Part shown: positions 24,177 through 30,753 of the stretch, in pieces
Position numbering within the stretch: position 1 is the first letter of the stretch
Layout of the letters: the number at the start of each line of letters is the position of its first letter
The notes under the pieces: generated by a model
Databases searched by the model: none
What the model was told of the DNA's origin: nothing
The model's input: only the letters and a program-made list of their open reading frames with translations
Source: Auanema rhodensis
Taxonomy: Eukaryota; Animalia; Nematoda
DNA length: 64,000 bases
NCBI GenBank assembly: GCA_964057225.1
Contig: OZ059897.1
Coordinates: forward strand, 16,678,001-16,742,000
Direction of reading: 5' to 3'
Translations under genes and position numbers: made by a program

Positions 24177-27100
24177 ATGACAGAAGTGGGACCTGTTGTC
24201 ATTAATTATGCAGATTTTTTCTGGGTAAGATCTTACTCTATTTGTGCTATGTGTGTATTTCCTTTGCAGGGAGATAAAAATCATGGCTTTCACATCTTAT
24301 ATGAGAACATGAAAAAAGGTGAGGAAGCTGTTAATGAGGTGGCTCAATTTGTTAAAGAGAGATTAACAGTAGAGGAAGAATATACCAAGTTATTAAATAG
24401 AACTGTCAATAGAGTATGTTCATGCGGATAACTAATTGTTTAAATGAAATTCTAAGTTTAGGTTGGATCTGTATTATCTAATGGAACTGCTATCGATACT
24501 GCTTGGTCTTTGACTAAAAGTACTTTTGAAATTTTACTAGATGTACAAACTATGATGGTTAAAAACTTACAGGTGAAAAATAATTACTCGTATAAAAGAA
24601 ATGTGCTTTTTTCAGGATCTTTCTAGGGAAGTTACTAAATATAAGGATGACGTTTCAAAAACAAGAAAAGAGGCAAAAAATCAAGCTATCGTTGATGCTG
24701 TTAATCTTATGCAGACAACTACCACATGTCTCCAAAAGGTATTGTACTTTGAAAAACGTAGAAATGATCAAATCGCTTTAGGCCAAAGAAACTTATCAAT
24801 CCCGAGTTACTGAACTAGATAAATTGAAAAAAGAAGCTAATCAAAATCCCAAGGAAATTAATAAAGCAGAAGCAAAGTTGTTGAAGGCGCGAGATGAATA
24901 TCGTGCTTATATTGATAAGTATGAGGTTGTTCGTCTGGATTTCGAAGAAAAGATGACCAATGCCTGTGAAGTTTTCCAAAATCACGACAAGTATTCATTG
25001 ACTTCTTTGAAAATATTTGAAATTTTGTTATAGATCTAACTTCACTATGCTTCACAGCTTTCTTGAACAGTACGCTACACACCACCAAGAAGCGTTCTGT
25101 AGTGCTCAACAGGTATTATAAAAATTTTTGAAGTTTACATTTTTTATTTGCTTCCCTCAGTTGTGTGGCCAATTGCGAGAGTCGCTACAACAGATAAAAA
25201 TTGATGATTTGCTCTCACAGTTCGTAAATGAAAAGGGAACTGGAACAGATAGGCCATGTTCGCAATAGGCTTCGTATATTATCACTAACTTCAATATTTC
25301 AGTACCTATTGCTATTGAGGAACTGGATGCTCTTGATGCTTTGCAAGTAGCTCCTAGTGTAACTATCATCCCTTCTGTGTCCATTACCAATCCCTCGTCT
25401 CTACAGGTATCTATATTTTTTCAATGTATATTAACTACTATTATTTGCCAGCCAAGTATGTCACATCCCCCAACTTCTATTGCTCCCACTGATTTCTTAA
25501 GCCTGGGTGAATTGGACAACTGGGCGAACTCCGAAAAAAAAAATACTGCAACTCAAGTAGTTTGACTATGCTATTTATAATATTTCAACGTTGTTGTAGA
25601 ATTCTCCTACTGATTCTCATAACAGTGACTCCACTGTTGGTGCTCCAGCATCTATTTTCTCCTCATCTTTAGGAGGAAGTGGACAGAAGAAACTGTCAAT
25701 GTTCTTACCTAAGCGGAAAAAAACAGTATCACAAAGTAGCATTGGCGATGATAGCGAAACAACGGGAGGTTTCACAAATTCAGCAAGATGAGCAAATTTA
25801 TATTTTTTATAGGATTATTCAAATTTCGGCAGAATAGAAGGTCGAAAAAATCAACTACTGATCTCACCGCAATTGATAGAGCTGAAGCATTAGGGTATGC
25901 ATTTCTGCTTTATAACACATCTTTCAAAGTATTCTCGTTTGATATTTGATTAGATATCGTTTATCGTTCTTCTCATCGGTATCCGTTTTCAAGGATTTCG
26001 CTTTCATTTTTGGTTCTCGCTATTAGTCCTTGCGGTTAACTAGAGAAAATATTCGATTGCTATGAAATAATATTTAATTTATAAACATTATTTTAAGAAT
26101 GGATGATGCGCATAGTACGGCAAGCAGTTCTAAGAGTGATGATAAGGTTTTAATTTTTTTTTTGTTTCATTCTTTTTTCTTTCTTAGCATCACAATGGAA
26201 CCATAACTCTATTAGATACACCTGTTAATAAACCTGTAATTGATGAAGAAGGATTTTCTATTCCACAAACAGATACTACTGAAAAAGAAGACACAAACTG
26301 GTCAAGTTGTAGTAGTGATGAGGAGGTTTATTCACTTTTTGAACTACTTTTCAATCTTTTTATTCTTACAGGATGAAAATGAAATGCAACAGTCAAAAAT
26401 TAGAGCAATTACTATCAAACCAGCAGAATCTGTTAAGACCATGAATGCTTCGGTTGATGAATTACGGGATGCCATTGGGCTCATTACTATTGGTCGTAGT
26501 AGTACATTTGAGAAGGTTTTTTAATTTTCTTTTTTCGCTCTTGACTTGTTATTGTTTTTAGGATCCTTGGGGTACTTTCAGTGGTAATAAACCCCCGATT
26601 TTCTCACAGTCTTTGTCCGGGGGTAGTCTAAAGCCTCTTCGACAAGCTCATACGGGAGATGGGAGATTTCGTTCTAACTTTAGTGGTAGGTTCTTAAATT
26701 ATTTTATGGCATCAATGTTTTTTTTTGCAGAATCTGAGTTTAGTCGTAGCAACGTACCGTTGAATTTTTCTGCTTCGTGTGGACCGGTTGCTGGAATGGC
26801 TAGAGCTCGTCCACGTAGTAATACTCCTACACATAATTCAACGTTTGCTTTGTCGTCTCAACAGTCTCTTTCTAATGTTAATAAGGTAAGAGTTTGGAAG
26901 CAGATTTTTCATAAAATGCTTATTTAGGAAATTAGTGTTAGCCAAGATTGGGGATCATCTTTTGCCATAAATAGCACGGGTTCTCAGCATTCTTTAGCAG
27001 AATCTTATTTCAATTTGTCTCAATCTACTGCAAATCTCATGCAGGTTTTTCTGAAAACTTACTTGTACATACTTTTATATATTTTCTTTTTTAGGCTACT

Positions 27101-29011: not shown

Positions 29012-29056
29012 ATGTTTCTTCAAAACGCCTTCAATTCTTTTGTATCATATTTCCAG
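29012..29056 (+). CDS. sod-1: Alternative first coding exon of sod-1 (N-terminally extended isoform)
   Basis: TTTTTAG|A-ATG, 15 codons MFLQNAFNSFVSYFQ, donor CAG|GTGCGA in phase 0. Joins acceptor TTCAG|29155 in frame ([12 protein letters not shown]). Confidence 0.75.
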
Positions 29057-29172
29057 GTGCGAGGTGTGATACAAGTTGCCTGTTTTTTAATATTTTTTTA
29101 ATCTTAACTGTTTTTTTAATAACTAATTAGTTCATAACATCACTTTCCATTCAGCCTTCGGCATCAACAATT

Positions 29173-29814
29173 ATGTCTAATCGCGCTGTTGCTGTTATCC
29201 GTGGAGATGTTGTCTCCGGAACTATTTGGTTCAAGCAAGTAAGGCATGCTTTTTGAATATTTAGATTATCATATTTTCTGCAGGATAAGGAGTCGGACCC
29301 ATGTGTTATCGAGGGAGAAGTTAAGGGCTTGACCCCTGGTCTTCACGGGTTCCATGTTCATCAATATGGTGATTCTACTAACGGTTGCCTCTCCGCTGGA
29401 CCTCACTTTAACCCATTCGGAAAGACCCATGGAGGACCAAATGTATTTTCTAATATAAAAAATTGGACTATTTTTATTTGTCGTAGGAGGCCGTTCGCCA
29501 CGTTGGTGATTTGGGAAATATTGAAGCTGGAGCTGATGGAGTAGCCAAGTTCACCATCACCGATGAACAAGTTAAAATTCACGGCGTCAATACAGTCATT
29601 GGCAGATCTCTTGTTTGTCATGCTGGCACAGATGATCTTGGTATTTCTTCACTATAGTTTCTTTTTCTAGTTTTATCTATTGTCATCAAAAACATTTCGT
29701 AATATTCGTTTTTCAGGTAAGGGAGTCGGTGATAAGGCTGAAGAGTCTTTGAAAACTGGAAACGCCGGAGCACGTGTTGCTTGCGGTGTTATTGCCATTG
29801 CTGCACCTCAATGA
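29173..29814 (+). CDS. sod-1: Cu/Zn superoxide dismutase, cytosolic type, 4 coding exons
   Basis: [22 protein letters not shown] / ...[39 protein letters not shown] / [12 protein letters not shown]...[13 protein letters not shown] / [32 protein letters not shown]. The metal-ligand His/Asp, both Cys and the catalytic Arg are present. Confidence 0.97.
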
Positions 29815-29850
29815 CTACTACGATATGATAAGCCGTCAAGTTCTTTATAA
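29812..29850 (+). other. Putative stop-codon readthrough cassette (TGA CTA) encoding X-LLRYDKPSSSL* with a PTS1-like end
   Basis: TGA CTA CTA CGA TAT GAT AAG CCG TCA AGT TCT TTA TAA read directly after the codons for AAPQ. Confidence 0.6.
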
Positions 29851-30753
29851 AAAAACATAAAAAGTTTCGTTTTAATAATTAGTTTAATGAATAAATTTAA
29901 TTAAATGAATGTATTTCAATATTTACTATGTATCTAGTATTTACAACAATTTAAATATTTTTTTGATAATCTTTGATAATATAAGTATGGCTAAATTTTG
30001 ACATTGGCACTAGAATTTGAAAATGGCACGCAGAAACCCGTAATTCTTTCTTCCCTTTTCGGCTGTAATAATGCAATAGTTTCAAAGGAGTCCTTACGTA
30101 GATCCTGAAAAAAGAGTATTGATTCAAGGACTTCAAAAAATCCATAAATATAACACTAACAACACATAACATTCAAAACAACCAAGTACACATTATTCTT
30201 CATTAAAATTTGGTGCCAATTATAAACAGTAATGTTTTGTACATACACAAAATTTGAAAATGAAAAATGGCGAATATAGTTAAATTAAAAGCGGAAGGCA
30301 AGATTATAGCTTAAGTAATGATGGCAGCAGATACTATATAGCATAAATTCTTAATGTTAAAAGTTTTATATTATCTATTCTGGCAAGAACATGGGCTATG
30401 ACCAAAACTAAATACAAAAAATACTGGATCAAATAAAATCTCGACATCTATAAGATGCCAAATAAGAAAAAACAGACAAACTAATAAAAAAATAGAAAAA
30501 AAACGAAAAAAGCTACCAGTATAACCGAATATAAATCAAAGGCACTGAGTGTGGAAGATGCACGAACATAAAGTCCGCAGGCAGGCGAGTATAAGAAAAT
30601 TTGACAGATAAGGACCATAAAACAAGAGTGCAGTACTTATTCTATACGACACCTACAACGACTACAACAACATTCAGACACATAACTTCTAAAGACTCTT
30701 AAAACAATTTTTGGACGACAAGAAGCGCAGCCATGCAACACTTCACGAACCGT

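What the first reader, a model, noticed from the sequence alone, without database searches (positions are those of the whole stretch)
29809..29850. sod-1 has a leaky TGA-CTA stop followed by an in-frame tail ending in SSL: candidate cryptic peroxisomal Cu/Zn-SOD made by readthrough
Seen in sequence: CAA TGA CTA CTA CGA TAT GAT AAG CCG TCA AGT TCT TTA TAA, i.e. AAPQ-X-LLRYDKPSSSL-stop. It is the only gene in the window with a TGA-CTA stop. The tail is followed at once by AT-rich UTR and an AATAAA near 29890. Established: UGA-CUA is the classic readthrough context, and readthrough appends hidden PTS1 signals to vertebrate MDH1 and LDHB and to fungal glycolytic enzymes. SSL is a non-canonical PTS1 variant (canonical S/A/C-K/R/H-L), helped by upstream basic residues (R and K here). 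Mammalian SOD1 enters peroxisomes by piggy-backing on CCS. Inference: this nematode may target SOD-1 to peroxisomes directly by readthrough, and since SOD1 is a dimer, a few percent readthrough could carry normal subunits in. My unverified recollection is that C. elegans sod-1 also has TGA-CTA followed by a short frame ending SRL; if true, this is a conserved mechanism that I do not know to be described.
Basis: partly seen in the sequence, partly recalled or inferred. Interest (0 to 1): 0.88.

Follow-up and report, generated by a model that had tools for sequence, protein, structure and literature searches.

The report
Leaky-stop peroxisomal tail on nematode SOD-1
The main Cu/Zn superoxide dismutase gene of this nematode ends in a leak-prone stop codon followed by a short hidden tail that looks like a peroxisome address label, and the same arrangement is kept in nine rhabditid nematode genera including C. 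elegans, so it is probably a conserved way of sending a little SOD-1 into peroxisomes.

Summary
CTA follows, then an in-frame tail LLRYDKPSSSL and TAA at 29848-29850. RNA contigs confirm every splice junction and place the tail in the 3' UTR.

Nine sod-1 genes keep TGA-CT[AG] plus a short, otherwise unalignable tail:
- window species: SSL
- Auanema: SSM
- C. elegans: SRL
- C. briggsae: SHI
- Necator: AHL
- Haemonchus: HHL
- Mesorhabditis: SKI
- Ditylenchus: SKI
- Diploscapter: CRL, one codon before the stop

Five of the nine fit the broad PTS1 pattern, against about 1.4% expected per gene (p about 7e-8). Genes without the context have no such ending: one Pristionchus SOD gene, Dracunculus, C. 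elegans sod-5 and 120 non-nematode SODs.

That case is already listed, untested, in Supplementary Table S2 of Stiebler et al. 2014. I found no description of the conservation across nematodes.

C. elegans is reported to have no CCS, the carrier that takes SOD1 into mammalian peroxisomes. Readthrough and import remain unproven, and SSL is a weak PTS1 variant.

Verdict: a new, conserved member of a known mechanism.

The parts
29012..29056 (+). Alternative first coding exon (MFLQNAFNSFVSYFQ) of the long SOD-1 isoform (179 aa)
   Evidence: RNA contig joint 29056 to 29155 in all four runs. The same exon is conserved in Auanema at L001 1319-1363.
29155..29238 (+). Exon holding the ATG of the 158-aa isoform (29173) and the linker PSASTI of the long isoform
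29284..29442 (+). sod-1 exon (53 codons, metal-binding histidines)
   Evidence: RNA joints. 94% identical to Auanema SOD; PF00080.
29487..29640 (+). sod-1 exon
   Evidence: RNA joints.
29717..29811 (+). Last coding exon, ending ...[10 protein letters not shown]
   Evidence: RNA joints.
29812..29818 (+). Leak-prone stop context TGA CTA C
   Evidence: Read directly. TGA CT[AG] is kept in 9 nematode sod-1 genes. UGA CUA (G) is the published high-readthrough motif (PMC4207609, PMC12233894).
29815..29847 (+). In-frame readthrough extension LLRYDKPSSSL (11 codons)
   Evidence: G+C is 36% against 15% in the next 100 nt. It lies inside the transcribed 3' UTR.
29839..29847 (+). C-terminal tripeptide SSL, a weak non-canonical PTS1 candidate
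   Evidence: AGT TCT plus a hydrophobic codon plus TAA is shared with Auanema. SSL is called a weak PTS1 in zebrafish Pipox (PMC8919083). It is predicted 'targeted' in Xenopus MDH1x (Stiebler Table S2).
29848..29850 (+). Second stop TAA, followed by A (a tight terminator)
29890..29895 (+). AATAAA polyadenylation signal
   Evidence: One RNA contig ends at 29925.

Best explanation
This is the sod-1 orthologue of a rhabditid nematode whose closest sampled relative is Auanema. Its stop codon sits in the leak-prone context UGA CUA.

Proposed mechanism, all inferred:
- A small share of ribosomes, likely in the percent range by analogy with LDHB and MDH1, insert a near-cognate amino acid at UGA (Trp or Arg in other systems).
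- They then add the tail LLRYDKPSSSL and stop at a tight UAA-A.
- The resulting 170-aa SOD-1x carries a C-terminal PTS1-type signal, here the weak variant SSL.
- The PTS1 receptor PRX-5/PEX5 would bind it and import it into the peroxisomal matrix. Because SOD-1 is a dimer, normal subunits could be carried in with it.
- Since C. elegans is reported to have no CCS, the readthrough tail would replace the CCS piggy-back route that mammals use.

Shown here: the sequence anatomy, its presence in the mRNA, and its conservation with co-occurrence of context and signal across clade V and one clade IV nematode.

Not shown: actual readthrough, the residue inserted, PEX5 binding and import.
For: (1) The anatomy is exact and the tail is transcribed, with no splice variant seen around it.

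(2) Orthology is supported by 86% identity to Auanema SOD, conserved flanking genes on both sides, and grouping with Auanema in the tree.

(3) Nine sod-1 genes keep TGA CT[AG] and a short tail:
- window: LLRYDKPSSSL
- Auanema: LVPVNEILTSSM
- C. elegans: LPESRL
- C. briggsae: LIEHSHI
- Necator: LHDAHL
- Haemonchus: LHGLLHHL
- Mesorhabditis: LSAPSPPSKI
- Ditylenchus: LEYPKRSKI
- Diploscapter: LDQQMQVYCRLQ
The linkers are unalignable, but the ends are PTS1-like.

(4) Shuffle null: a [STAGCN][RKH][LIVMAFY] ending arises in 1.3-1.7% of shuffled UTRs. Observed 5 of 9, p about 7e-8. For the strict [SAC][KRH][LM] pattern, 2 of 9, p about 2e-4. The window's empirical background is 11 of 475 tails for the broad pattern and 0 for the strict one.

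(5) Context and signal co-occur. One Pristionchus SOD gene (TAA GAG), Dracunculus (TGA AAC) and C. elegans sod-5 (TAA ATC) lack both the context and a pattern-fitting end. So do 120 non-nematode SOD loci.

(6) In all nine genes the tail is richer in G+C than the following UTR, and every second stop is followed by A, G or T rather than C.

(7) Literature:
- UGA CUA drives readthrough-dependent PTS1 targeting of LDHB, MDH1 and fungal enzymes (PMC4207609, PMC4359377, PMC5133446).
- Mammalian SOD1 enters peroxisomes on PTS1-bearing CCS (PMC4680570, PMC8919083).
- C. elegans has no CCS orthologue (PMC11083455).
Against: - No measurement of readthrough, no peptide and no localisation exists for any nematode SOD-1.
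- SSL and SSM have Ser instead of a basic residue at position -2, so they fit neither PTS1 pattern. Auanema's tail has no upstream basic residue.
- Haemonchus HHL also fits neither pattern, and in Diploscapter CRL is followed by one more codon.
- The PTS1 predictor scored the C. elegans extension only as 'twilight zone', -2.2 (Stiebler Table S2).
- The window context lacks the +7 G of the full UGA CUA G motif, and three species have CUG instead of CUA.
- The UGA CUA motif has been tested in fungal and human cells, not in nematodes.
- C. elegans sod-5 has a tail ending SNL behind a tight TAA-A stop, which shows that loosely PTS1-like ends can arise by chance.
- The sample is only 11 sod-1-type genes. 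The lineages are related, so the p-values overstate independence.
Confidence: 0.6

Rival explanations
1. The tail has no function in this species. TGA-CTA and the SS[LM] end are inherited leftovers or chance. Any readthrough product is rare translational noise, and SSL is not recognised by PRX-5.
For: SSL and SSM do not fit either PTS1 pattern. The window and Auanema are sister taxa, so the shared AGT TCT plus stop may be plain ancestry. Tail length is unremarkable. The sod-5 tail ends SNL by chance. No nematode experiment exists.
Against: The context and a PTS1-type end persist across nine genera, including canonical SRL, AHL and SKI, while the linker and the rest of the UTR diverge completely (p about 7e-8). 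An abundant housekeeping enzyme keeps the leakiest stop context in all nine. Tail G+C is coding-like.
Confidence: 0.27
2. Readthrough is real and selected, but the extension serves another purpose. It could be a C-terminal S/T-x-hydrophobic PDZ-type ligand, a stability or turnover signal, or a modulator of dimerisation.
For: SRL, SHI, SKI, SSL and SSM also fit S-x-hydrophobic. The tails are short and not strongly hydrophobic.
Against: AHL and HHL lack Ser/Thr at -2 (PDZ numbering), whereas small/basic/hydrophobic is the PTS1 rule. A peroxisomal pool of SOD1 is documented in mammals (PMC4680570). Every previously proven UGA CUA extension with such an end is a PTS1 (PMC4207609, PMC4359377, PMC5133446).
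Confidence: 0.09
3. The UGA is recoded by another route (selenocysteine), or the tail is reached by alternative splicing or editing rather than by near-cognate readthrough.
For: UGA is the Sec codon. Contig data can hide rare isoforms.
Against: There is no SECIS or any other Rfam element in 29600-30300. There is no stable structure downstream (z = +1.6). RNA contigs show only the four expected joints and no base differences. From my own knowledge, C. elegans is said to have only one selenoprotein.
Confidence: 0.02

Closest known systems
LDHBx and MDH1x: vertebrate lactate and malate dehydrogenase isoforms made by readthrough at UGA CUA (G), with a hidden PTS1 (Schueren 2014 PMC4359377; Stiebler 2014 PMC4207609; Hofhuis 2016 PMC5133446)
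   Same: An abundant cytosolic oligomeric enzyme. UGA CUA context. A short extension with a divergent linker ending in a PTS1 (SRL, CRL; SSL in Xenopus MDH1x). Context and signal conserved together among orthologues. Normal subunits expected to be co-imported.
   Different: The cargo is an antioxidant enzyme rather than a redox-shuttle dehydrogenase. The lineage is nematodes. The tails are shorter (6-12 codons). The window's signal is the weak SSL, and the +7 G is absent. Nothing has been tested experimentally.
C. elegans Cu/Zn SOD entry (X77020) in Supplementary Table S2 of Stiebler et al. 2014
   Same: It is the orthologue of the window gene, with the same TGA CTA and an extension LPESRL. 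It is listed as a candidate for readthrough-derived PTS1.
   Different: It is a single species and was scored 'twilight zone' (-2.218). It is not mentioned in the main text and has not been followed up in papers I could search. The conservation across nine genera and the link to the absence of CCS are not made there.
CCS-mediated piggy-back import of SOD1 into mammalian peroxisomes (Islinger et al. 2009, as cited in PMC4680570 and PMC8919083)
   Same: The same outcome: a small share of a mainly cytosolic Cu/Zn SOD reaches the peroxisome matrix through the PTS1 receptor.
   Different: In mammals the PTS1 sits on a separate carrier protein. Here it would sit on a minor translational isoform of SOD-1 itself, and C. 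elegans is reported to have no CCS (PMC11083455).
C. elegans pyp-1 (inorganic pyrophosphatase), TGA CTA plus ...SSKL (Stiebler 2014)
   Same: A nematode gene with the same context and a hidden PTS1, also only predicted.
   Different: A different enzyme with a canonical SKL and a high predictor score.

Membership tests
Readthrough-generated cryptic-PTS1 proteins (LDHBx/MDH1x type) | Stop codon UGA followed by CUA (G), the high-readthrough context | tested here: met
   TGA CTA C at 29812-29818. The +7 G is absent. TGA CT[AG] is found in 9 orthologues.
Readthrough-generated cryptic-PTS1 proteins (LDHBx/MDH1x type) | In-frame extension whose last three residues are a PTS1 ([SAC][KRH][LM] or an accepted variant) | tested here: inconclusive
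   The window ends in SSL, a non-canonical weak variant. Orthologues end in SRL, AHL, SKI, SKI and SHI, which fit, and in SSM, HHL and CRL+Q, which do not.
Readthrough-generated cryptic-PTS1 proteins (LDHBx/MDH1x type) | Context and signal conserved together among orthologues while the linker diverges | tested here: met
   (p about 7e-8). The negatives lack both.
Readthrough-generated cryptic-PTS1 proteins (LDHBx/MDH1x type) | Measurable readthrough above background (reporter, ribosome footprints, peptides) | not testable with these tools
   Only assembled RNA contigs were available. No Ribo-seq or proteomics.
Readthrough-generated cryptic-PTS1 proteins (LDHBx/MDH1x type) | PEX5-dependent peroxisomal localisation of the extended form, lost when the PTS1 is deleted | not testable with these tools
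   Needs experiments. No published localisation was found.
Cu/Zn superoxide dismutase, nematode sod-1 orthologue | PF00080 domain, nematode SOD-1 C-terminus ...ACGVIA.AAPQ, conserved gene neighbourhood | tested here: met
   (86% identity to Auanema, 78% to the cluster holding C. elegans SOD-1). Synteny with Auanema on both flanks.
Selenoprotein (UGA decoded as Sec) | SECIS element in the 3' UTR | tested here: not met
   No Rfam match at E up to 1 in 29600-30300. No stable fold.

The most novel reading that the evidence does not exclude
Rhabditid nematodes (clade V and at least one clade IV genus) have, over a very long time, maintained programmed stop-codon readthrough of sod-1. Through it a small share of the cell's main superoxide dismutase acquires its own PTS1 and enters peroxisomes. 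This route would replace the CCS piggy-back route, since C. elegans is reported to lack CCS. It would be the first functionally assigned, deeply conserved readthrough event in nematodes, and it could be tested directly in C. elegans.
Probability: 0.5. Interest if true: 0.72.

Novelty: new member of a known kind. Interest (0 to 1): 0.62.

Why it matters
Peroxisomes make superoxide and hydrogen peroxide, but how Cu/Zn SOD gets into them has been worked out only for mammals, where it rides on CCS. C. elegans is reported to lack CCS and, from my own knowledge, nematodes also lack the PTS2 pathway. A built-in readthrough PTS1 would explain how they solve the problem.

It would also add an antioxidant enzyme to a list of readthrough-targeted peroxisomal proteins that so far holds only metabolic enzymes. 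It would give C. elegans, the main ageing and SOD1-ALS worm model, a hidden SOD-1 isoform. Standard C-terminal tags and cDNA transgenes remove or mask that isoform.

The conserved UGA CU[AG] in nine genera is also a natural test of whether the mammalian and fungal readthrough motif works in nematodes.

Tried and rejected
- **Metagenome scan.** I scanned for the last-exon coding pattern ([13 protein letters not shown]) to gather more nematode 3' ends. It returned 120 loci, none nematode-like (fungal, protist, viral or other). I used them only as a negative control.
- **Nippostrongylus.** The look-up of the Nippostrongylus protein was not on record. All 12 contig look-ups are spent, so the sample stays at 11 sod-1-type genes plus sod-5.
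- **Rfam and RNA folding.** The Rfam scan for SECIS or other RNA elements found nothing. The RNA downstream of the stop is less stable than shuffles, so there is no structural readthrough stimulator.
- **Pairwise tail alignments.** I aligned the tails of close species pairs to test for in-frame indels. The sequences are too short and the result is partly circular, so I did not use it as evidence.
- **Protein tree.** It is poorly resolved apart from window plus Auanema. It therefore cannot say whether Pristionchus P0126 is the true orthologue.
- **Earlier findings.** Nothing was found near this place or by words.
- **Other TGA-CTA frames.** The Pfam scan of the four other frames in the window was uninformative.
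- **PTS1 predictor.** I could not run the PTS1 predictor on the window tail because it is not available here.
- **Literature.** Searches for SOD-1 with readthrough or peroxisome in nematodes found nothing beyond Stiebler's Table S2.
- **CTL-2.** I could not confirm from the library my recollection that C. elegans CTL-2 ends in SHI.

Full report
**1. What is in the window**

Positions 29785-29850 read ...GCT GCA CCT CAA TGA CTA CTA CGA TAT GAT AAG CCG TCA AGT TCT TTA TAA. Joining exons 29173-29238, 29284-29442, 29487-29640 and 29717-29814 gives a 158-aa Cu/Zn superoxide dismutase ending ...[11 protein letters not shown].

Assembled RNA contigs from four public runs of the same organism show exactly these three joints. 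They also show a fourth joint, 29056 to 29155, that adds an upstream coding exon. The resulting long isoform is 179 aa and begins [25 protein letters not shown]. The contigs run straight through the stop and the tail, with no alternative joint and no base differences. One contig ends at 29925, about 30 nt after the AATAAA at 29890-29895.

**2. Which gene and which organism**

The window is 28% G+C. The closest protein is the SOD of Auanema sp. JU1783 at 86% identity. Strongylid SODs follow at 82-84%, and the cluster containing C. elegans SOD-1 is at 78%.

The genes on both sides of sod-1 match those flanking the Auanema gene. The two proteins group together in an otherwise poorly resolved tree. 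I conclude that this is the sod-1 orthologue of a rhabditid (clade V) nematode related to Auanema.

**3. The comparative test**

I fetched the genomic DNA after the stop of sod-1-type genes from ten other nematodes and from the C. elegans paralogue sod-5.

| Gene | Stop and next codon | Tail |
|---|---|---|
| window | TGA CTA | LLRYDKPSSSL |
| Auanema | TGA CTA | LVPVNEILTSSM |
| C. elegans | TGA CTA | LPESRL |
| C. briggsae | TGA CTG | LIEHSHI |
| Necator americanus | TGA CTG | LHDAHL |
| Haemonchus contortus | TGA CTA | LHGLLHHL |
| Mesorhabditis spiculigera | TGA CTA | LSAPSPPSKI |
| Diploscapter pachys | TGA CTA | LDQQMQVYCRLQ |
| Ditylenchus destructor (clade IV) | TGA CTG | LEYPKRSKI |

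Three genes lack the context:

| Gene | Stop and next codon | Tail |
|---|---|---|
| Pristionchus fissidentatus (one SOD gene) | TAA GAG | ET |
| Dracunculus medinensis (clade III) | TGA AAC | NAGFRFFII |
| C. elegans sod-5 | TAA ATC | ILLTGLFFSNL |

Nine genes therefore share the weakest stop context. Each has a 6-12 codon tail whose linker cannot be aligned, yet whose last residues follow the small/basic/hydrophobic rule of PTS1 or come close to it.

**4. Is this more than chance?**

- I shuffled each gene's own 3' UTR. The broad pattern [STAGCN][RKH][LIVMAFY], which I recall from memory as the PROSITE microbody-signal pattern, ends the tail in 1.3-1.7% of trials. The strict pattern [SAC][KRH][LM] does so in 0.15-0.36%.
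- Observed: 5 of 9 fit the broad pattern (p about 7e-8) and 2 of 9 fit the strict one (p about 2e-4).
- These figures treat lineages as independent, which overstates the case. However, the tails differ so much that shared descent of the tripeptide alone is unlikely.
- Within the window, 475 tails follow open frames of at least 40 codons. Of these, 11 (2.3%) fit the broad pattern, none fits the strict one, and only sod-1 ends in SS[LM].
- 120 non-nematode SOD genes pulled from metagenomes show TGA CTA only twice, both in fungal-looking loci where the frame probably runs into an intron. None has a PTS1-type tail.
- In all nine nematode genes the tail is richer in G+C than the next 100 nt (window 0.36 against 0.15). 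Every second stop is followed by A, G or T, never C.
- One caution: the sod-5 tail ends in SNL behind a tight TAA-A stop, so loosely PTS1-like ends do arise by chance.

**5. Weak points for the window gene itself**

- SSL, and SSM in the sister species, carry Ser rather than a basic residue at position -2 and fit neither pattern. The two species share AGT TCT, a hydrophobic codon and TAA at the same place, with one 3-nt indel in the linker. That could be selection or simply ancestry.
- SSL is accepted elsewhere. It is described as a weak PTS1 in zebrafish pipecolate oxidase (PMC8919083). The readthrough tail of Xenopus MDH1...KMKSSL, is predicted 'targeted' (Stiebler Table S2).
- The window tail has K at -6 and R at -9, which may help. 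Auanema's tail has no basic residue.
- Haemonchus HHL has a parallel in chicken pyrophosphatase, ...RRHHL, which is predicted 'targeted' in the same table.
- In Diploscapter, CRL is followed by one more codon before the stop.

**6. Alternatives checked**

- There is no SECIS or any other Rfam family in 29600-30300.
- The RNA after the stop folds worse than shuffles, z = +1.6. Any readthrough would therefore rest on the linear motif, as shown for MDH1 (PMC5133446).
- The contigs show no alternative splicing or editing, although contigs drop rare variants.

**7. Mechanism proposed**

By analogy with LDHB (about 2%) and MDH1 (about 4%) (PMC4680570, PMC5133446), a small share of ribosomes would decode UGA with a near-cognate tRNA. 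Trp and Arg were found at this position in human MDH1x.

The ribosomes would then add the tail and terminate at UAA-A. The extended SOD-1x would be bound by the PTS1 receptor and imported, possibly as a dimer with a normal subunit.

Mammalian SOD1 has no PTS and enters peroxisomes on CCS, which carries a PTS1 (PMC4680570, PMC8919083). C. elegans has no CCS orthologue and loads copper through glutathione (PMC11083455, citing Jensen and Culotta 2005). A PTS1 on SOD-1 itself would fill that gap. This link is my inference.

**8. What is already known**

Stiebler et al. 2014 (PMC4207609) scanned model organisms for UGA CU plus a predicted PTS1. The main text names only C. elegans pyp-1. [quoted passage not shown]

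Later reviews repeat only pyp-1. Full-text searches combining sod-1 or superoxide dismutase with readthrough, PTS1, peroxisome, prx-5 and elegans found no study of it.

The single-species candidate is therefore on record, untested. I could not find any description of the conservation across nine genera, the co-occurrence of context and signal, or the CCS argument.

**9. Verdict**

I put about 0.85 on the feature being under selection in rhabditid nematodes as a group. I put about 0.6 on it working as a readthrough-dependent peroxisomal signal in this particular species, where the signal is the weak SSL.

It is a new, conserved member of a known mechanism rather than a new kind of system. It is readily testable in C. 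elegans.

Noticed in passing
window 29012-29056 and 29155-29172; L001 1319-1363: sod-1 has an upstream alternative coding exon that gives a 21-residue N-terminal extension (MFLQNAFNSFVSYFQ+PSASTI). RNA contigs support it. The exon is conserved in Auanema (MFLQNAVSSLLSYFQ), where the annotation gives only the 158-aa form. It parallels C. elegans isoform a. The function of the extension is unknown.
   Followed up: partly
window 29993-30067; L001 2280-2354: A conserved non-coding block lies between sod-1 and the convergent downstream gene. It is shared with Auanema and contains repeated TGGCAC motifs (cattggcac...aaaatggcacg). It could be a 3' UTR element of the minus-strand neighbour or a binding site.
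   Followed up: no
proteins P0015, P0149, P0161, P0147, P0127, P0013, P0133, P0143: Several SOD-1-like proteins end directly in weakly PTS1-like tripeptides instead of AAPQ. Most are from clade IV nematodes: Halicephalobus ANL, Strongyloides and Parastrongyloides ANI, Steinernema ASL and ASI, Rhabditophanes AKV, Acrobeloides HKI. Caenorhabditis bovis (ANI) shows the same. This may be a constitutive alternative to the readthrough tail. Their DNA could not be fetched.
   Followed up: no
L011 (C. elegans sod-5), stop at 2327: The paralogue sod-5 ends in TAA ATC, and its hydrophobic post-stop tail ILLTGLFFSNL happens to end in SNL. This is a reminder that loose PTS1-like ends occur by chance.
   Followed up: yes
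L007 (Diploscapter pachys), stop at 2642: The tail reads ...VYCRLQ, so a canonical CRL sits one codon before the stop. It may be a recently disabled signal or an allele difference in this parthenogen. The other allele was not examined.
   Followed up: no
window 30076-30105: RNA contigs of three runs break at 30105 and continue with unmatched sequence. This is probably a splice site of the convergent minus-strand neighbour, an RRM-domain gene by synteny with Auanema. Its 3' end overlaps or abuts the sod-1 3' region.
   Followed up: no
window stops at 25563, 32387, 41827 (+) and 53204 (-): Four other open frames of 48-98 codons also end in TGA CTA. None has a significant Pfam match, and their coding status is unknown.
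   Followed up: partly
L003 (C. elegans Logan cDNA contig): A single spliced RNA contig carries sod-1 and continues into a second called gene downstream. In the genome the next gene is a TECR-family gene. This suggests co-transcription of the two genes.
   Followed up: no
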